This document shows positions 25,927 to 34,388 of a stretch of 64,000 nt of DNA, piece by piece. This stretch comes from Mantamonas sphyraenae STR306. Lineage: Eukaryota; Protista; CRuMs. The notes under the pieces were generated by a model. That model ran no database searches. It was not told the DNA's origin and saw nothing but the letters and a program-made list of their open reading frames with translations. Each line of letters begins with the position of its first letter. Position 1 is the first letter of the stretch. Made by a program: the position numbers and the translations under genes. The stretch lies in NCBI GenBank assembly GCA_026936335.1, contig JAPMXV010000009.1:124001-188000 (forward strand). The letters are read 5' to 3'.

Positions 25927-27508
25927 TCACGCCGCTTGGCCGCTTAGGGTGAGGACGATGGCGCGGATGCTCTCGACGGAGCCGAGGACGGCGCCGAGGA
26001 GGCCGAGGACAAAGCAGACGCCATCGGCGATGATTTCGTGGGTGGGACGTGTGCCGTCGAAGCGGTAGCCAAAGTGGACGAGGTTGAGGAGGGACGGGAT
26101 GATAAACTCGAGGGAGGCAGAACCCAATGAGCCGACAAGGCCGATGAGGAGGGAAAAGTCGGGGATGGAGAGGGCGACGAGGTAGGTGAGGAGGACGAGA
26201 GCCAGGCGGAAGCCATTTTGGATCCATGTGACCTGTTTGGGTTTGGGCTCGTAGCCGCGCTGCTGGAGTTTGTCAAAGAGGATGTCCTCGAGGATTTCGA
26301 TGGCGACGTAGAGCTGGCCGGGATAGGTGAAGAGGATGGAGACGATGAGCATGATTTGGATGGTGAGCTGGAGGGTGCGCCAGACGGGTGTTTGGTACTC
26401 TGCGGCGAGTTCGAGATTGAGAGTGACACCCTGGCTGTTTGTGTCGTCGCCAAAGGCAAGGTAGCCGACAATGCCAAAGAGGAGGTAGACAGAGACGGAA
26501 ATGATCATGGTGATGGTGAGGACGCGTGGGAAGCGTTTGGGGTATCGCATGCTGCTCTCGCAGGGGATGACGAGACCGATGCCTTCGAAGGAGTAGGTGA
26601 TCATGCCAAAGGTGATGGGCAGGGTGGCAGGCACGAAAAGGTCGACGCGGCTTTCGGGCAGGTCACCACGAGACCAGGCAGCGGCACGGGGAAAGGCGGC
26701 GACGAGGACGACGGCCATGGCACCACAGACGGCAATGCAGGCCACAATGGACATGGGTGCCACCCATTTCAGGGAGCGAACCCAGCCCATGAGCACATAA
26801 ATAGGGAACAAGCACCAGGCAATGTCCAGGAAGTTCCAACCGGAGATGGCCGCCGTGTGTTTGGCGACGTACACCACGTACACGCAACAGAAGCCCAGCT
26901 GGGTGAACACAAGGGCCACGTTGACAAGGCGGCCACCCCAGACACCCAGTGCCTCGTTTGCTGCGGGAGGGTGGGAAAGGGCGGGGGAAGGTGAGTGATT
27001 GTCCCGGGGGTGATGGTCCGGGGTCTTGCTGGCTCTGGGGTGTGCTGGGATGGGGTGGGGTGTGACGTACCAATGTCTGCATATGTGACGACGTTTTTAC
27101 CCTTGTCCAACATGTCATTCTTGACATCGAGGAGGGCGTAGCACATGTAGGCGGCCAGGGAACACATGACGATCATCAGGATGGGCGTCAGGACGAGACC
27201 GCCCTCTTTGAATGCGTAGGGGAGGGCCAACACACCGCTTCCGAGAAAGGTCTTGAGAAGGGTGGAGCCAACGTGGAGGGATCTGGGAGGGTAGGGCAAC
27301 GGTCGGGGAGCAGGGTTAGCAGGTGAGGGAAAGGGAAGGTGTGGACGCCGGACGGGATTTTCACGTGAACCCACGAGCTGTAGGGACGGCCCTCCTTGGC
27401 AAGGGACGGGGCGTCGTGCATGACATCCTCCTCATCTGCGGCCCCGCCTGCTTGGATCTTGTTGGACATTTCGTCCGAATTGAGCTTGGCGTAGTTGTGG
27501 TTTGCCAT
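25927..27508 (-). CDS. Amino-acid permease, AAAP/SLC36-like; exons 27508-27375, 27282-27071, 26960-25927
   Basis: LLKTFLGSGVLALPYAFKEGG, QLGFCCVY, YSFEGIGLVIP, FTYPGQLY; about 11 hydrophobic segments. Confidence 0.92.
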
Positions 27509-27561
27509 GGCAGGGAAGCGAGTTCGGTTTCATTCGTCGGCGCACGGCCCTGCAACACAAA

Positions 27562-30500
27562 ATGACCTCCAGTGATTTCGCTGTGGGCATTGATTTGGGC
27601 ACGACGAATTCGTGTGTGAGTGTGTGGAGGGACAACGGGGTGGAGGTGTGCACGAACGACCTCGGCCAGCGTTTGACGCCGTCGTGTGTGGCGTACCGGG
27701 AGGATGGGGAGCCGCTGGTGGGTGCGCTTGCGGCCAAACAGAGCACACGCAACCCAAGCAACACGATCTTTGAGGCCAAACGGCTGCTGGGATGCATGTT
27801 TGATGACGATTCGGTGCAACAGGACATGACAAAGTGGCCGTTTGAGGTGGTGCGGAATGGAGACGGGTCGCCGGCGTACAGGGTGACGTCGCAGGGGCAG
27901 ACAGTGGTGGTGTCGCCGGAAGATGTGATGGCAAAGCTGTTGGACAAGCTGAGGAATGATGCGAGTGCTTTCTTGGGTGCAGAGGTCTCTGGAGTGGTGA
28001 TCACGGTGCCTGCTTTTTTCAACGAGGCGCAGCGCACGGCGACGCGGGACGCTGCACGCAAGGCAGGGCTGCGAGTGCTTCGCTTTGTGCCGGAACCAAC
28101 TGCTGCGTCGTTGGCGTACGGGTTGGACAAGATTGGGAATGGAGACGGGGAGAAGAGGGTGCTGGTGTTTGATCTCGGCGGCGGGACCGTGGACGTGAGT
28201 GTGGTCGTCGTCGAAGATGGGATCTTTCAAGTCATTGCTACCTTGGGGGATACCCACTTGGGTGGTGTGGACTTTGACAATCGACTCGTGGCGCATTTGG
28301 CGAAAGAGTTTCGTGAGAAACACCGTCGGGATCTGACCAAGAATCCACGGTCGCTGCGGCGCTTGCGTGTGGCTGCAGAGGCGGCCAAGCGTGCGCTGTC
28401 GAGTTCAACAACGGCAACAATCGAGGTGGATGCGTTGCACGAGGGGATCGACTTTGACACGACGGTGACGCGGGAGGAGTTTGAGGCCATGTGTGAGGAC
28501 TTGTTTGCGGCGTGTCTGGAGCCTGTGGAGCGTGTGATTGCGTCTGCAAAGGTAACCAAGGAGGACATTGACGACGTTGTGCTAGTGGGTGGGTCGACAC
28601 GTGTGCCCAGAGTGCAGGCACAGCTGAGCGAGTTTTTCAACGGCATGAAGCTGCACAAGGGCATCCATCCAGACGAGGCGGTGGCACACGGGGCAGCCTT
28701 GCAAGCGGCAGTGCTGACAGGCCGGGATTCAGCGACCAAGTTGAGTGAGATGCTGCTGATTGATGTTGCGCCGCGATCTGTGGGTGTGGAGACTGTGGGT
28801 GGAGCCATGGTGACGGTCATCACACGCAACCTATCGGTACCTGCCAAAAAGACGACATTGGTGGGAGTGATGGTGCCGTCGCACCTGCAGGCGCGCTCTG
28901 TTGCGATTCGTGTGTTTGAGGGTGAGGCAGCGTTTTCGGAGCAGTGCGCCTTCCTGGGCGAGGTGGTGGTGGATGTGACGCGAAAAGGGGACAAAGATAT
29001 GCAGGAGCTATCCGTGACGGTGGACTGTGACGCCAACGGGGTCATGCACCTGGCAGTGTGGCAGGGAAACGATCGGGAGAAAACGGTGGAGGTGGGCCTG
29101 AAATCGGCAACGCTGCGTCCTGTGCCCACACACGCCGTGCTGCCACGGGAGATGACAGAGGAGAGGGAGGAGATGATTGTGGACTCGCTGGTACAAGCGC
29201 TGCGGACGGATGCATCTGTGACGCAGGTGAATCTGAAAGGGGGTGGCCTGTCGGGGACGTGTGTGCACAGGGTGCTGGATGCATTGCGTGAGAACAAGGG
29301 GGCGGTGTTGCAGAGTCTGGACTTGCGTGGGAACCACATGCGTGAGGACGATGTGGATCTTGTTGCGGAGCTGCTGGAGCGCTGTCCGTCGCTGTGGCGA
29401 GTGAACCTGTCTGGGGTCAGCAGTGAGGTGGTGGAGGAGCGTTTGCAGAGGAATTGGGAACGTGCAGAGGCGTTGCTGGATGCAGCGTGGAGAGGCAGCG
29501 TGAAGAAGGTGGAGCAACTGTTGGGGGATGGCGTGACGGTGGATGTGTGGCCAGACGAGCAGCACACGGCGTTGATGTGTGCGGTCGAGACGGCCAATGC
29601 GGAGATGTGTCGGTTGCTGATGACACACGGGGCAAACGCGCGTGCAAGGCCGTGGAAGACGGGGAAATGTGCATTGTCTGTTGCGCGAGAGCGTGGGGTG
29701 CTGCATTTGCTGGGAATGGGGAAGGACGGAGATGAGGTAGACGAGGAGGAGGAGGAGGAGGAGGACGTGGTGCAGGTGTTGGTGGAAGAGGCGAGTGCGA
29801 GTGTGGAGTTTGAGGATCTGGAGATCCCGTGGTCGGATCTGGACAAGGGGGAGTTGTTGGGAGAGGGTGGATTTGCGTACGTGTACAGAGGGATGCTGCG
29901 TGGAAGCACGCCGGTGGCCATCAAGATGATGAAGGTTCAGGTGATGGACAAGGAGCACGAGGCAGCGTTTATGAAGGAGGTGGAGATGATGAAGCGGCTG
30001 CGGCATCCAAACATGATCACACTGCACGGCGTGTGCACGGAAGCGGAACATGTGTGCATGGTGACGGAGCTGTGTGAGCTTGGATCGCTGCACAAGCTGC
30101 TGCACGAGAGGGGCGAGGGTGCGGAAGGGCTGTCTGAGGAGGCCAAGGTGCACATTGCACGGGATGTGGCAGACGGAATGGCGTACCTGCACGGATACAA
30201 ACCACCGATCATGCACAGGGACCTGAAGCCAGAGAATGTGCTGCTGGACAGGCGAGGCGTGGCACGGATCAGCGACTTTGGGTTGAGCCGTGTCAAGGAG
30301 CACACCAAGACGAAAACCAAGTCAGGCGCCGGGTCCTGGCAATACATGGCCCCTGAGCTGTTGTTGGATGATGATGACACGGACAGCGACGAGGAGGAGG
30401 ATGCAGGGGCGTCGTCCTCGAGCGTTTCCATGCGGACGTTTGACGAAAAGGTGGATGTGTTTGCGTTTGGGATGCTGCTGTGGGAGATGATGCATGAAGA

Positions 30501-31185
30501 GCAGCCGTACAGCGGAAAGGGAGGCTTTTCGATGGCCAAGTTGATCTCCCGATGGGGGAAGAAGCCGGACAAGCGAGAGAAGATCGACACGAGCGTGTGT
30601 CCGGGATGGGCGACAAAGCTGATTGAGCAGTGCTGGGCGACGGATCCATCGCAACGACCTCCATTCACACAGATTGTGGCGACGCTGGACACGGTGGAGG
30701 TGATGAAGAAGGAAGAGATGCACTCGCAGGTGGAGATTGTGAGCATCCTGCACGAGATCCAAGGGACACAGGCACAGATTCTGGACGCGGTGCACTTTGA
30801 CCACGAGGCATGGCAGGCACAGGTGGCTGCACTGGACCCGAGGGCGCAGGAGGAGATTGTCACTGCGCTGAAGCAGGTACAAAGCGACACGGAATCACTA
30901 AAGAGGAAGAGTGGCCAACAGAGCAAGGCAATCCGGTTTCTGGGAGAGCAGGTACCACAGTTGCGGACATGGCTGACAGAGGTGCAGACACGGGCAGAAG
31001 CACAAGGACTGAACGCAGCAGATGTGGACATTGTGCGTGCGCAACTGGCTGCAATGGAGCAGGACGTGATGCAAGTGAAAGAGCAGGTGAGCAGTCAAGG
31101 CGCAGCGATGGTGGGAGTGCAAGCGAGGCTGGTGACGGTGGAGATTGGGATGGGAGAGAGTGGAGAGGATGATGAAGGAGTGTGA
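27562..31185 (+). CDS. Fusion protein: Hsp70 NBD + degenerate SBD-beta + LRR + ankyrin + TKL-type kinase + coiled coil (intronless)
   Basis: GIDLGTTNSCV, EAKRLLG, TVPAFFN, EPTAA, VFDLGGGT, LVGGSTRVP; LxxLxLxxN-type repeats (VTQVNLKGG, LQSLDLRGN, LWRVNLSG); HTALMCAV ankyrin; GEGGFAYV, VAIK, HRDLKPEN, DFG, YMAPE, DVFAFG. Confidence 0.9.
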   Translation: MTSSDFAVGIDLGTTNSCVSVWRDNGVEVCTNDLGQRLTPSCVAYREDGEPLVGALAAKQSTRNPSNTIFEAKRLLGCMFDDDSVQQDMTKWPFEVVRNGDGSPAYRVTSQGQTVVVSPEDVMAKLLDKLRNDASAFLGAEVSGVVITVPAFFNEAQRTATRDAARKAGLRVLRFVPEPTAASLAYGLDKIGNGDGEKRVLVFDLGGGTVDVSVVVVEDGIFQVIATLGDTHLGGVDFDNRLVAHLAKEFREKHRRDLTKNPRSLRRLRVAAEAAKRALSSSTTATIEVDALHEGIDFDTTVTREEFEAMCEDLFAACLEPVERVIASAKVTKEDIDDVVLVGGSTRVPRVQAQLSEFFNGMKLHKGIHPDEAVAHGAALQAAVLTGRDSATKLSEMLLIDVAPRSVGVETVGGAMVTVITRNLSVPAKKTTLVGVMVPSHLQARSVAIRVFEGEAAFSEQCAFLGEVVVDVTRKGDKDMQELSVTVDCDANGVMHLAVWQGNDREKTVEVGLKSATLRPVPTHAVLPREMTEEREEMIVDSLVQALRTDASVTQVNLKGGGLSGTCVHRVLDALRENKGAVLQSLDLRGNHMREDDVDLVAELLERCPSLWRVNLSGVSSEVVEERLQRNWERAEALLDAAWRGSVKKVEQLLGDGVTVDVWPDEQHTALMCAVETANAEMCRLLMTHGANARARPWKTGKCALSVARERGVLHLLGMGKDGDEVDEEEEEEEDVVQVLVEEASASVEFEDLEIPWSDLDKGELLGEGGFAYVYRGMLRGSTPVAIKMMKVQVMDKEHEAAFMKEVEMMKRLRHPNMITLHGVCTEAEHVCMVTELCELGSLHKLLHERGEGAEGLSEEAKVHIARDVADGMAYLHGYKPPIMHRDLKPENVLLDRRGVARISDFGLSRVKEHTKTKTKSGAGSWQYMAPELLLDDDDTDSDEEEDAGASSSSVSMRTFDEKVDVFAFGMLLWEMMHEEQPYSGKGGFSMAKLISRWGKKPDKREKIDTSVCPGWATKLIEQCWATDPSQRPPFTQIVATLDTVEVMKKEEMHSQVEIVSILHEIQGTQAQILDAVHFDHEAWQAQVAALDPRAQEEIVTALKQVQSDTESLKRKSGQQSKAIRFLGEQVPQLRTWLTEVQTRAEAQGLNAADVDIVRAQLAAMEQDVMQVKEQVSSQGAAMVGVQARLVTVEIGMGESGEDDEGV

Positions 31186-31408
31186 AGCCATGAAGGATCC
31201 CACACTCATCAACCCCAATCCTTGTCACTCTTTTGTTTCTGGGTAATGAGGGAGAGGGGCGTGTGAATGGATGCTTGGGTTTAAAGGGTGCGAGGTGGGT
31301 GGGGGCAGATGGGGTTGGAGGCGGGGGGGCAGCAGAGTGAGGAGGTGGGGAGGTGGGTGGGGAGGGACACAGGCCACTTGTGACTGTTTCGAGGAAAGGG
31401 TTTTCCAA

Positions 31409-34388
31409 TCATTCATTCGTCCACGCAAACAACGACCCACCTCTCTCCACCTTTCCTCCATCACCTGCACCACTCCCGTCCTCCTCATCACCTGCATTCC
31501 CACTCCCACCACCCCCACCACTTCCTCCGGTGCTCCACAGCTCATCCCGCGTCCACAAACTATCCCCAAAACTCATCCCACTAAACAGCGACGACGCCCC
31601 TCCTCTCTGACCCCCTCCGCTCCCGCCCCCACTCCCACCAACTCCGCCTCCCTCTCCATTCCCACCACCCATCGAATGCCTGCTCGCCAAATCCGCGTCC
31701 ACCAAATCCGACGGCAGCAGGCCACCCAACAAACTCTGCAGATCCAACCCGCCGCTCCCGCCGCTCCCGCCGCTTCCCTGCCCCATTTGCCCCATCTGGC
31801 CCTGCCCACTCATCCCAAACCCACCTCCACCACCTCCACCACCTCCACCTCCCCCCATCCCACTCTGCCCACCTTGCCCCACCTGCCCAAACCCAGGCGG
31901 CGGCATCCCTGTAAACCCTGCCGTTCCACCTCCCGCTGTCCATCCTCCCATCCCACCCATCCCACCCATCCCTCCCATCCACCCACCACCACCACCACCA
32001 CTCTCTCCCACCGCCACCCTCCCAACCCCCTCTCCGCCTCCTGCCACCACCACCTCCTCCTTCCCGGCCACCACCTCTTCCATCCTCTTCAACTCCCTTT
32101 CCAACCGTTCCTTCTCCTTCCTCTCCTCCTCCAACTCCCTCTCCAACCTCTCCTTCTCCCTTCTCTCCTCCTCCTCCTCTTCCTCCCTCTTCTTCCTCCT
32201 CCTCTCCTCCTCCTCCGCCGCCGCTCTCTCCCTTCTCTTTCTCTCCTCCTCCGCCTCTCTCTGCCTCCTCTCCCTCTCCTCTTCCTCCTCCCTCGCCTTC
32301 CTCTCCGCCTCTTCTTTCTCCTGCTTCTCCGCCAGCACCCGCGCCAGCTCTTCCTCCCTCGCCTTTTCCTCCTCTTCAATCTGCCGTTTGATCCTCGCTC
32401 TCCTCTCCGCCTCTTTTGCCACCCTCTCCGCCTCCTTTGCCTCCTCCTTCCGCTTCTCCTCTTCCAACCTGCGCATCTGCCGTTCATACTCTGCCTGCTC
32501 CTGCTGCTCCTTCACCTTTTTCTTCCGCCTCGCCTCGCTCTCCTTCCTCTTCCTCGCCTTTTCCTCCTCCTCCTCTGCCTCCTGCAGCAGCTCCTGCTGC
32601 CTCTCAAACGCAATCACCTCCTTGTACGCGTCTGTGATCTGCAGCAGCAGCATCTGAGCCACAAACGTCATAAACAGCTCCCTCGCCTCGTCCAGCTCCT
32701 CCTGTAGGTCGGCCAGGTAGTCGTCGCTCTCACTGCGCTTCCCACGCGCCTGTTCACCACCCCCGGCCGCCTCTTCCTCTTCCCTCGCAATCTCCTCCTT
32801 CACAATTGTGTTTAGCAAGTCAATCAGTTCGCCTCCATCCCCGTCCACCATCGACTCGTCCACCATCACATATCCGTGCTCCACACGCAACAGCCCCACC
32901 AGCTTATTCACAGACGGCGACGCCTTTGGAATCACACTCGTGCTCTCCTCCTCGTGGTCATACAGCCTCGCCAGCGACGGCTGCGTCACAAGCGAGCTGA
33001 TAAACTGCGCCGCATCCTCATCAAAGTGCGACACAGGCCAGTAGCCCATGCTCACCATGCCATAGTGCATGCGAAACGATCGCTTCAGAATGTTCCGCCG
33101 TGGCACCAGCGCAAGCATGTCCTGCGGCGAAGGCTCCACCAGCCCAGGCATGTCATCGTACAGTCCCTCCTCATCCTCCTCTTGTCCCTCATCCCCACTG
33201 CCAAACATTGCCTCTGGATACACATGCGACAGGCTGTGCACCATGCTCTCGTCCACAGGCAGGCCCAGCACCTGCGCGCTTGCCGGAATCATCCCGCACA
33301 CGCTCTCCACATCGTTCGTCCTCGTCCCAAACGAGTTGATCATCGCGTCCATGTGATTGTGGCCCTCGTGCACGGGTGCGTTTAGGTACCGCGCAAGCCG
33401 TTCCGCCTCTTTGGCAGGCGTGCCACGCAGCATCAAAAAGTCGCGGTCTCGCTTCTCCTTTGCACTCAGCTCCCTGTCCTCCCTCACCATGGCTGCACTC
33501 CACTCTGCCTTCAGCACCTTTGTGCGTCGCACGTCCTTCCGATCGGCCATCGTGGGAAGCACCTCGCCGCTGTTGTTGCGGTGGCACTCGCTGCTTGCGT
33601 CCGTTTCAAACAGATAATCCACCACGTGGTTGGGTGCACTCTCTTCACTCTCCTCCAACCGTGCGTACTGCGTTTCTGCAAACTGGTTGTGCGACCCGCG
33701 TCGAAAGTACGTCTCCAGCGACATGGCCACCGGTGCCCTCGCATCCAGGATCCCTCCGTGCTGATACCCCAACTCCTGCTGGTAGCCGTCGTACACGCTC
33801 CCAATCTCCTCGCTTGCCAGAATCTTTTTCCGGTTGCACGCCTCGCACCGACACACATGCGCAAAGTGCGTGCGCATCCTCTCGTTCAGTGCCTCCCTGT
33901 CCAAACGCACCACTTTTTGCTGCTCTTCTGCACTCAGCGTTGCCCAGAACTTCTTCACCCTCGCCACAGACCGCATCCCGTGCTCCTTGCACGACATCAT
34001 CGGCGTGTCCCACAGATCGTTCCTGTCCACACGCCTGACCCCATGCAGACTCACTCCTTCCTCGCCTCCTCCCTCTGCCTGCCCGCCGTTCCCGCCACCG
34101 CCTCCCGCCTTTCCGCCCTCCTCCTCATCTCCCGACCGCTTCCGCCGTTGATTGCTCTTGCGTCGATCGCTCTTTCGCCGCCGCTGTTACATCCACCACA
34201 CACGCACACACACGCACATGCACGCACGCACGCACACACGACACCATACCAAATGCACGCCCATCAATCGCGTCAGGAATCCAAGCTGTGATTCTCTCCA
34301 ACCCCCTACCGCCACTCCCCCCACCCCCTCTCGGGTTTGCATTCCATCCACCCTCCCGTCCTACCTCGGCATCTCCTTGACCACCCAT
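31409..34388 (-). CDS. NST1-like stress-response protein with long E/R coiled coil and Gly-rich tail; exons 34388-34365, 34183-31409
   Basis: KKFWATLSAEEQQKVVRLDREALNERM..CRCEACNRK and ARELFMTFVAQML..DAYKE match the two conserved Nst1 blocks as recalled. Confidence 0.75.

What the first reader, a model, noticed from the sequence alone, without database searches (positions are those of the whole stretch)
27562..31185. Hsp70 ATPase fused to LRR, ankyrin, an intact-looking TKL kinase and a coiled coil: candidate chaperone-gated signalling or immune receptor
Seen: one uninterrupted ~1,200-aa ORF. It has a full Hsp70 NBD (~27562-28720) keeping all three signatures and the catalytic K/E positions. 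A divergent SBD-beta follows (~28750-29060) with no alpha-lid and no EEVD. Next come ~3 LRRs (~29170-29420), ~2 ankyrin repeats (~29470-29710), a kinase with all core motifs plus an acidic insert after APE (~29830-30690), and a heptad-rich tail. Known: ROCO/LRRK kinases combine ANK/LRR, a nucleotide switch and a TKL kinase, and plant NLRs carry integrated decoy domains. Inference: the Hsp70 ATPase may act as the nucleotide switch, an unfolded-protein sensor, or a decoy for pathogen factors that target Hsp70, and so control a kinase that oligomerises through the coiled coil. I do not recognise this architecture from any characterised protein.
Basis: partly seen in the sequence, partly recalled or inferred. 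Interest (0 to 1): 0.8.

Follow-up and report, generated by a model that had tools for sequence, protein, structure and literature searches.

The report
Hsp70 chaperone fused to receptor-like kinase
A deep-branching flagellate (very probably Mantamonas sphyraenae) has one real, transcribed gene that joins a lid-less Hsp70 chaperone to the short LRR, ankyrin, Raf/CTR1-like kinase and helical tail of a large receptor-like kinase family, so the chaperone sits where that family normally carries its variable recognition domain.

Summary
Window 27562-31185 (+) is one uninterrupted 1207-aa ORF. It encodes an Hsp70 NBD, linker and SBD-beta with no lid and no EEVD. A 20-aa disordered joint follows, then 3 RI-type LRRs, about 2.5 ankyrin repeats, an acidic linker, an intact TKL kinase (closest solved structure: CTR1) and a helical tail. 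DNA contigs and spliced RNA contigs from public runs cover it; the transcript contig starts 40 nt before the ATG.

New context:
- The kinase and tail form a 1.38-kb cassette, 90-94% identical in DNA to at least 10 paralogs, with a sharp edge at 29818.
- Those paralogs carry 4-17 variable LRRs in front (dN/dS 0.76, against 0.13-0.20 in kinase and tail). None carries Hsp70.
- The Hsp70 keeps 67 of 68 highly conserved NBD positions but only 6 of 10 in SBD-beta. SBD-beta also holds 7 of the 10 amino-acid polymorphisms.

An exhaustive protein search found no protein with this full architecture. It did find seven other Hsp70+kinase proteins from protists, plants and bacteria, several of them lid-less and seemingly independent in origin; I found none characterised.

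Best reading: the Hsp70 is the ATP-driven input module of a receptor-like MAP3K-type kinase. This is inferred, not shown.

The parts
27522..27561 (+). 5' leader: the RNA contig of run X3 begins at 27522, 40 nt before the ATG
   Evidence: record 18 (27522-29163). X3 is RNA because its record 17 is spliced over two GT..AG introns of the upstream minus-strand gene.
27562..31185 (+). Complete intron-less coding sequence, 1207 aa plus stop
   Evidence: covered by DNA and RNA contigs
27562..28719 (+). Hsp70 nucleotide-binding domain (aa 1-386) with an intact ATPase site
   Evidence: 67 of 68 highly conserved columns kept. pLDDT above 90.
28720..28752 (+). Conserved hydrophobic interdomain linker (aa 387-397, ...EMLLIDV...)
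   Evidence: alignment to human HSPA2 and HSPA1A
28753..29094 (+). Divergent Hsp70 substrate-binding beta domain (aa 398-511). The cleft loop L3,4 is remodelled. No alpha-helical lid and no EEVD.
   Evidence: 6 of 10 conserved columns kept. 7 nonsynonymous to 1 synonymous variants fall here.
29095..29157 (+). Disordered joint between the Hsp70 and LRR parts (aa 512-532): the fusion junction
   Evidence: pLDDT below 50 in both models
29158..29406 (+). Cap helix plus three ribonuclease-inhibitor-type LRR units (aa 533-615)
   Evidence: AF2 strand-helix pattern; homology to the LRR_6 arrays of paralogs
29425..29712 (+). About 2.5 ankyrin repeats (aa 622-717)
   Evidence: Pfam Ank_2 aa 638-712; AF2 helices
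29719..29808 (+). Acidic, poly-Glu disordered linker (aa 720-749)
   Evidence: sequence; pLDDT about 43; flagged as a simple repeat at 29731-29778
29818..31197 (+). Kinase-plus-tail cassette shared at 90-94% DNA identity with at least 10 paralogs (81% with the C58 copy). It has a sharp 5' edge at 29818 and ends 12 nt after the stop.
29821..30687 (+). TKL-group, Raf/CTR1/MLK-like protein kinase domain with all core motifs and an acidic insert after APE
   Evidence: Pfam; the best solved relative is Arabidopsis CTR1, 3ppz, E 5e-56; invariant columns
30688..31146 (+). Helical tail of five predicted helices, with clear heptad periodicity at about aa 1147-1200
   Evidence: dN/dS 0.13 among paralogs

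Best explanation
This is a genuine, expressed, lineage-specific fusion gene. It belongs to an expanded intracellular receptor-like family of this flagellate, built as variable RI-type LRR array, ankyrin repeats, Raf/CTR1-like TKL kinase and helical tail. In this one member all but three LRRs are replaced by a lid-less Hsp70.

Proposed working, with each step marked:
1. The Hsp70 part is a working ATPase. This is inferred from its fully conserved catalytic core and interdomain linker.
2. Its remodelled substrate-binding beta domain captures an exposed peptide segment. The ligand could be unfolded proteins in general or one particular client or foreign protein. Inferred.
3. The ATP/ADP cycle docks and undocks the beta domain. 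That repositions the attached LRR-Ank scaffold and releases the MAP3K-type kinase. Inferred.
4. The kinase then signals through the same output cassette that the LRR-bearing paralogs use. It is shown that the cassette is shared and homogenised. It is inferred that shared output means shared pathway.

Tail-mediated self-association is possible but untested.
For: - One ORF with Pfam-confirmed domains.
- DNA contigs are continuous over 26400-29163. RNA contigs run 27522-29163, 29215-29867 and 29838-30081. The first gap is bridged by a 111-nt contig listed for the DNA runs; where pieces meet, they overlap by k-1. The last RNA piece shows 0 mismatches in a stretch where paralogs differ by about 6%.
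- The assembly is PacBio-based (PMC10492846).
- NBD: 67 of 68 conserved columns are kept although the domain is only 56% identical to the genome's own cytosolic Hsp70. This indicates long-term purifying selection on the ATPase.
- The Hsp70 stands at the position where paralogs carry 4-17 variable LRRs.
- Across the family dN/dS falls from 0.76 in the LRRs to 0.20 in the kinase and 0.13 in the tail.
- The output cassette is 90-94% identical among at least 11 genes.
- The kinase motifs are intact and the domain is CTR1/MLK/B-Raf-like.
- Lid-less Hsp70 joined to a kinase recurs in other, seemingly unrelated proteins. This suggests the pairing is useful rather than accidental.
Against: - No biochemical data exist.
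- Variants among three runs give 10 nonsynonymous to 4 synonymous changes over aa 1-723 (pN/pS 0.83). That is compatible with neutrality, although the numbers are small.
- The missing lid should make peptide binding fast and weak.
- The sharp cassette edge means the present kinase half may have been joined or overwritten recently, so the Hsp70 and this kinase need not have co-evolved for long.
- No ortholog could be examined; the Mantamonas proteomes appear to be absent from the libraries searched.
- Contigs cannot exclude an internal transcription start.
Confidence: 0.5

Rival explanations
1. Integrated decoy. The Hsp70 part is bait for factors of prey, parasites or viruses that target host Hsp70. 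Their binding to it, or modification of it, triggers the kinase. This would resemble integrated domains of plant NLRs and cereal kinase fusion proteins.
For: - The family has immune-receptor-like traits: tandem arrays, variable LRR copy number, LRR dN/dS of 0.76, and gene conversion of the output half.
- Amino-acid polymorphism clusters in SBD-beta: 7 N to 1 S, pN/pS about 2.5, clustering p = 0.0014.
- Plant proteins joining a kinase to Hsp70 exist: P0135 (malectin-kinase-Hsp70) and wheat P0136.
Against: - A passive bait has no need for all 67 of 68 conserved ATPase positions and the allosteric linker.
- No NB-ARC, NACHT or helper partner is evident.
- The polymorphism sample is only 14 sites from one study.
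Confidence: 0.2
2. Client-recruiting or self-chaperoning module. The Hsp70 part either holds unfolded clients so that the kinase phosphorylates them, or stabilises the attached TKL kinase in cis. By established knowledge, TKL kinases are typical Hsp70/Hsp90 clients.
For: - P0140 joins a lid-less Hsp70, a TKL kinase and a U-box in one 955-aa ORF. Hsp70 with a U-box ligase is the CHIP quality-control pairing (established knowledge). This points to modification of bound clients.
- The kinase is of the Raf/MLK type.
Against: - At least ten paralogs with a 90-94% identical kinase do without a fused Hsp70, so the kinase does not need one in cis.
- The Hsp70 occupies the input position of the family.
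Confidence: 0.15
3. A young chimeric gene of little or no function, made by recombination of a divergent Hsp70-LRR-Ank gene with the family's kinase-tail cassette, and now drifting.
For: - Sharp homology edge at 29818 with 94% identity downstream and no detectable DNA similarity upstream.
- The gene is a singleton.
- Overall pN/pS is 0.83.
Against: - The 1207-codon frame is intact.
- The conserved ATPase core persists despite 44% divergence from the canonical copy.
- The gene is transcribed at a depth similar to unique flanks.
- The cassette itself is under purifying selection.
- LRR-Ank shows 0 N to 1 S.
Confidence: 0.12
4. Assembly or gene-model artefact: two genes wrongly joined.
For: The 3' half is a multi-copy repeat. 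Short-read DNA contigs of X1 and X2 have a hole at 29731-29919, over a GAG repeat.
Against: - RNA contig 29215-29867 crosses the ankyrin, poly-Glu and cassette edge. The next contig matches this copy exactly.
- The cassette differs by at least 6% from every other copy.
- The frame is open throughout.
- LRR-Ank-kinase is the family's normal order.
- DNA and RNA contigs overlap by k-1 across the Hsp70-LRR joint.
Confidence: 0.03

Closest known systems
LRRK/ROCO kinases (LRRK2, Dictyostelium Roco proteins)
   Same: One polypeptide with ankyrin repeats, LRRs, a nucleotide-hydrolysing regulatory domain and a TKL-group kinase. ROCO proteins are among the kinase-domain hits (P0015, P0017, P0049).
   Different: No Roc GTPase and no COR domain. 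The NTPase here is an actin-fold Hsp70 ATPase at the N-terminus. The domain order is ATPase-LRR-Ank-kinase. A helical tail replaces the WD40 domain.
Canonical cytosolic Hsp70 (HSPA8, HSPA1A, HSPA2)
   Same: NBD, hydrophobic linker and SBD-beta align end to end (E about 1e-158). The catalytic residues are intact.
   Different: Only about 52-56% identical. No alpha-helical lid and no EEVD tail. The substrate-cleft loop L3,4 and the PAPRG loop are remodelled. About 700 aa of signalling domains follow.
The genome's own LRR_6-Ank-(coiled spacer)-TKL kinase-tail family (contigs C25, C2, C34, C58, C73)
   Same: The same short-LRR/Ank/kinase/tail order. The kinase-tail cassette is 90-94% identical.
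   Different: Paralogs have 4-17 LRRs and no Hsp70. Most have an extra spacer of about 500 aa between Ank and kinase. LRR-Ank is only 31-38% identical to the window gene.
Uncharacterised Hsp70+kinase fusions in public data: P0140, P0168, P0169, P0135, P0136 (wheat), P0249 and P0221 (bacterial)
   Same: Hsp70 and a protein kinase in one predicted protein. P0140, P0135 and P0168 also end the Hsp70 at about profile position 495-500, so they are lid-less. P0140 is a single uninterrupted ORF on its contig.
   Different: None has the LRR or ankyrin parts. The order is often kinase first. The partners differ (U-box, malectin). The Hsp70 parts do not group with the window's in a tree. Some of them may be gene-model fusions.
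Arabidopsis CTR1 and Raf/MLK MAP3Ks
   Same: Closest solved kinase domains (3ppz, E 5e-56; MLK and B-Raf at about 1e-34).
   Different: Different regulatory regions. The acidic insert after APE is specific to this family.
BiP-regulated stress kinases (IRE1, PERK) and plant NLR-ID / cereal kinase fusion proteins
   Same: Only the logic: a chaperone or an integrated domain controls a signalling kinase. This is established knowledge, not tested here.
   Different: In those systems the Hsp70 acts in trans, or the integrated domain is not an Hsp70. There is no sequence relationship beyond the generic domains.

Membership tests
Hsp70 family (PF00012) | Actin-fold NBD with catalytic Asp/Lys/Glu and phosphate-binding loops | tested here: met
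   Pfam E 1.7e-169. D11, K73, E178, D204 and T209 are present. 67 of 68 conserved columns are kept.
Hsp70 family (PF00012) | Hydrophobic interdomain linker and SBD-beta sandwich | tested here: met
   Aligned to aa 499-511 of solved Hsp70s. AF2 gives beta strands at 398-509 with high pLDDT. The sequence is divergent: 6 of 10 conserved columns kept.
Hsp70 family (PF00012) | Alpha-helical lid and C-terminal EEVD of cytosolic eukaryotic Hsp70 | tested here: not met
   The profile match stops at 496 of 599. Aa 513-531 are disordered. The next helix is homologous to LRR helices of paralogs. The protein ends in ...EDDEGV.
ROCO / LRRK | Roc (Ras-like GTPase) followed by a COR domain | tested here: not met
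   No Roc, COR or Ras family hit at E up to 0.1.
ROCO / LRRK | LRR and/or ankyrin repeats with a TKL kinase | tested here: met
TKL-group protein kinase, catalytically competent | Gly-rich loop, VAIK Lys, alphaC Glu, HRD, DFG, APE | tested here: met
   K788, E806, H885-D887, D905-G907 and A930-E932. PK_Tyr_Ser-Thr E 5e-59. CTR1 is the best solved hit. Activity itself cannot be tested here.
NLR / STAND immune receptors | NB-ARC or NACHT NTPase | tested here: not met
   No such Pfam hit in the gene or in 12 paralogs.
Mantamonas LRR_6-Ank-kinase-tail family (defined here) | RI-type LRRs, then 2-3 ankyrin repeats, then the conserved kinase-tail cassette beginning ...SLEIPWSDL | tested here: met
Coiled-coil oligomerising tail | Self-association of the tail | tested here: inconclusive
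   Helices and one heptad stretch are predicted. The homodimer job gave no answer.

The most novel reading that the evidence does not exclude
A lid-less Hsp70 serves as a built-in, ATP-driven ligand sensor of a MAP3K-type kinase. This would be a cis version of the chaperone-titration logic known from BiP with IRE1/PERK, wiring proteotoxic stress or a specific captured peptide directly to a kinase cascade. The solution would have arisen several times independently: Mantamonas, the unknown protists behind P0140, P0168 and P0169, plants and planctomycetes.
Probability: 0.25. Interest if true: 0.8.

Novelty: new variant of a known kind. Interest (0 to 1): 0.6.

Why it matters
Hsp70s are known to regulate kinases only in trans, for example BiP with IRE1 or PERK, or Hsp70/Hsp90 with client kinases. 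A natural single-chain Hsp70-kinase would be a compact test case for how the Hsp70 ATPase cycle can be read out as a signal. Its apparently independent recurrence in other lineages works as a 'Rosetta stone' hint of a general Hsp70-TKL kinase link.

The gene also sits in a receptor-like family with variable LRR inputs and a homogenised kinase output, in a lineage (CRuMs) near the base of Amorphea. It therefore bears on how intracellular recognition systems were assembled in early-branching eukaryotes.

The evidence so far is purely computational.

Tried and rejected
- Word-index homolog search with the C-terminal 688 aa. It returned only generic kinase hits at 40% identity or less. There was no self hit, so the Mantamonas proteome seems absent from that library, and a blank for orthologs means nothing.
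- The top exhaustive-search hits with two matched stretches looked like fusions. Pfam showed that nine of them are tandem Hsp70-Hsp70 models.
- Complex prediction on two copies of the tail gave 'no answer' (score 0.11, mark 0.32). It is not evidence either way.
- The second AF2 job (aa 1-760 with an Hsp70-rich alignment) modelled the LRR-Ank part badly, because lid helices of other Hsp70s were aligned to it. Only its Hsp70 part and the disordered joint are used.
- ESM Atlas feature search found only Ank+kinase clusters at 0.88, below the 0.9 level. It is a lead only.
- Literature searches for Hsp70-kinase fusions, kinase fusion proteins with Hsp70, and an HSP70 domain with a kinase domain in protists found no description of such a protein.
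- Two word look-ups in earlier scan notes were blank for this family.
- The idea that helix 533-549 is a remnant of lid helix A was rejected. It aligns with LRR helices of the C58 paralog.
Full report
**What is there**

The window has about 59% GC and long intron-poor genes. Positions 27502-31185 (+) form one open frame. The first ATG is at 27562 and gives a 1207-aa protein beginning MTSSDFAVGIDLGTT, the usual start of an Hsp70.

Pfam finds:
- HSP70 at aa 7-511 (E 1.7e-169). The match covers profile positions 1-496 of 599, so the helical lid is absent.
- Ank_2 at aa 638-712.
- PK_Tyr_Ser-Thr / Pkinase at aa 762-1042 (E 5e-59).

Solved cytosolic Hsp70s (HSPA2, HSPA1A, Hsc70) align from residue 6 to about 500 with E near 1e-158.

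**The organism**

The assembly holds 25,061,354 bases in 78 contigs. This matches the published FALCON assembly of Mantamonas sphyraenae: 25.06 Mb, 78 primary contigs, GC 59.19%, PacBio-based, with haplotigs separated (PMC10492846). I take the identification as very probable, but it rests on these statistics only.

**Is it one gene?**

Four public runs of one study were laid on 26400-32300.
- X1 and X2 are DNA. One 3285-nt contig runs unspliced from the upstream gene into the Hsp70 part, up to 29163.
- X3 is RNA. Its contig over the upstream minus-strand gene skips 26961-27070 and 27283-27374, with CT..AC ends, which read GT..AG on the minus strand.
- X3 has a contig that starts at 27522, 40 nt before the ATG, and runs to 29163. 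Further X3 contigs lie at 29215-29867 and 29838-30081.
- A 111-nt contig at 29134-29244, listed for the DNA runs X1 and X2, spans the gap between 29163 and 29215; in X3 only the depth table shows cover there.
- Adjoining pieces overlap by 30 nt, which is k-1. They are therefore neighbouring nodes of one graph, broken at variant sites.
- The piece at 29215-29867 crosses the ankyrin repeats, the poly-Glu linker and the start of the multi-copy cassette.
- The piece at 29838-30081 has no mismatch, in a stretch where every paralog differs by about 6%.

The fusion is therefore present in DNA and RNA. Contigs cannot exclude additional internal starts.

**Anatomy**

- Hsp70 NBD. The catalytic and phosphate-binding residues are all present: D11, K73, E178, D204, G206-G208, T209. 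The linker reads EMLLIDV. Against 53 diverse Hsp70s, 67 of 68 columns that are at least 90% conserved are kept.
- SBD-beta. Only 6 of 10 conserved columns are kept. The cleft loop that reads FSTAEDNQ in DnaK is replaced by VGVMVPSHLQ. The PAPRG loop is also replaced (my reading of the alignment).
- Joint. AlphaFold2 gives pLDDT above 90 for aa 1-510 and a disordered joint at 513-531.
- LRR, Ank and onward. With an alignment of paralogs, aa 533-549 form a cap helix. Three strand-helix LRR units follow (to aa 615), then ankyrin helices (622-717), a disordered acidic linker (720-749), a confident kinase fold (754-1034) and five tail helices (1035-1195).
- Kinase. The motifs are intact (K788, E806, HRD 885-887, DFG 905-907, APE 930-932). 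The closest solved kinase is Arabidopsis CTR1, followed by MLK and B-Raf.
- Tail. Heptad periodicity is clear only for about aa 1147-1200.

**The family around it**

Searching the genome with aa 521-1207 gave 73 matches.
- The kinase-plus-tail part (aa 751-1207) is 90-94% identical in protein and DNA to at least ten genes: six in a tandem array on contig C25, three on C2 and one on C34.
- It is 81% identical in DNA to one gene on C58.
- In every case the similarity starts at window 29818 (...SLEIPWSDL) and ends just after the stop.
- Upstream of that edge the window gene is only 31-38% identical to them.
- Pfam shows the paralogs to be LRR_6 x4-17, then Ank, then (in most) a helical spacer of about 500 aa, then kinase and tail. 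None has an Hsp70 or any other N-terminal domain.

Among the ten close paralogs identity rises from 74-82% in the LRRs to 96-99% in the kinase. Among the six C25 copies dN/dS falls as follows:

| Region | dN/dS |
|---|---|
| LRR | 0.76 |
| Ank | 0.49 |
| Spacer | 0.44 |
| Kinase | 0.20 |
| Tail | 0.13 |

dS is also lower in the 3' half. A variable input with a homogenised output fits gene conversion of a common signalling cassette.

The Hsp70 part is a singleton. Its nearest kin in the genome are the two canonical cytosolic Hsp70 genes, at 56% identity. No other Hsp70-like frame exceeds 823 aa.

**Polymorphism**

Against the reference, the three runs show 14 variants in aa 1-723: 10 nonsynonymous and 4 synonymous.
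- By region the counts are NBD 3:2, linker plus SBD-beta 7:1, and LRR-Ank 0:1. The clustering in SBD-beta gives p = 0.0014.
- None is listed in the 1.1 kb upstream.
- The N:S ratio rejects strong purifying selection (omega 0.1, p = 2e-4) but not neutrality.

The sample is small and comes from one study. It probably reflects two haplotypes of a diploid culture, so this is a lead and not a result.

**Relatives elsewhere**

- The word-index search with the C-terminal 688 aa found only generic kinases.
- The exhaustive HMMER search with aa 1-1100 was justified because the claim rests on absence of relatives. It found no protein matching Hsp70 plus the LRR-Ank part.
- The highest scorers are tandem Hsp70-Hsp70 models.
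- Seven of the top 150 representatives combine Hsp70 and a kinase:

| Protein | Make-up | Source |
|---|---|---|
| P0140 | lid-less Hsp70, Pro/Ser-rich linker, TKL kinase, U-box | one uninterrupted ORF on a 3.6-kb metagenome scaffold |
| P0169 | full Hsp70, kinase-like domain | 826-kb contig with only sparse short called genes around it, which I read as eukaryote-like |
| P0168 | helical domain, kinase, lid-less Hsp70 | metagenome or Logan |
| P0135 | malectin, kinase, lid-less Hsp70 | Logan |
| P0136 | kinase, Hsp70 | wheat |
| P0249, P0221 | DnaK with a bacterial Ser/Thr kinase | one is labelled as a Planctomycetales MAG |

- In a FastTree of the Hsp70 parts the window's domain sits on a long branch and is not sister to any of them. 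The support is weak and the root arbitrary, so 'independent origins' is likely but not proven.
- The list shows only the top 150, so weaker fusions would be missed.
- Three literature searches found no description of such a protein.
- The Atlas search offered only Ank+kinase clusters.

**Interpretation**

Shown:
- The gene is real, transcribed and intron-less.
- The ATPase core and the kinase are intact.
- There is no lid and no EEVD.
- The gene belongs to a receptor-like LRR-Ank-kinase family whose output half is shared.
- The Hsp70 stands in the input position.

Inferred: the Hsp70 cycle and peptide binding gate the kinase. The rivals are an integrated decoy, a client-recruiting or self-chaperoning module, and a young near-neutral chimera.
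- The conserved ATPase and linker argue for an active switch.
- The replacement polymorphism in SBD-beta and the family's immune-like evolution keep the decoy idea open.
- P0140's U-box hints at modification of bound clients.
- The paralogs show that the kinase does not need an Hsp70 in cis.

It is not a ROCO protein, because it has no Roc-COR. It is not an NLR, because it has no NB-ARC or NACHT.

**Limits**

- No orthologs could be examined.
- The canonical Hsp70 genes could not be fetched for a codon-level comparison.
- The tail dimer test gave no answer.
Only simple repeats were skipped (29731-29778, 31812-32011, 32108-32300).

Noticed in passing
G000 contig C25, about 107000-176000 (loci L011-L014, L020-L023, L034, L036): Six LRR_6-Ank-spacer-kinase-tail genes lie about 7.4 kb apart in two blocks. 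At least four of them alternate with a conserved 618-aa minus-strand ORF that has only a weak G8-domain hit. The repeated unit is therefore a two-gene unit.
   Followed up: partly
window 29818-31197 and paralogs on C25, C2, C34, C58: The kinase-tail cassette has the same sharp 5' edge (...SLEIPWSDL) in three different upstream contexts: directly after the ankyrin repeats in the window gene, likewise in the C58 copy, and after a helical spacer of about 500 aa in the C25 type. It looks like a discrete exchangeable module kept alike by gene conversion.
   Followed up: partly
window 27504-27522: RNA contigs of the upstream minus-strand gene and of the Hsp70-kinase gene end only 18 nt apart, head to head. 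This suggests an extremely short bidirectional promoter region.
   Followed up: no
window 26961-27070 and 27283-27374 (minus strand): Two GT..AG introns of 110 and 92 nt in the upstream gene are confirmed by a spliced RNA contig of run X3.
   Followed up: partly
L037:266-3133 (P0140): A metagenome scaffold carries a single ORF joining a lid-less Hsp70, a TKL kinase and a U-box. It is an uncharacterised chaperone-kinase-E3 combination from an unknown organism.
   Followed up: partly
L027:1201-3615 (-) (contig C43, 281198-283615): An 805-aa ORF with LRR_6 and ankyrin repeats has a C-terminal region 47% identical to the helical tail (aa 1055-1206) but no kinase domain. The tail therefore also occurs without the kinase.
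   Followed up: no
window 31165-31182 and all close paralogs: The family's proteins end in an acidic ...GESGEDDEGV. Whether this acts as a docking motif, as EEVD does in Hsp70 and Hsp90, is unknown.
   Followed up: no
window 28753-29094: Seven of ten amino-acid variants among three public runs fall in the 114-codon SBD-beta, while the 1.1 kb upstream shows none.
   Followed up: partly
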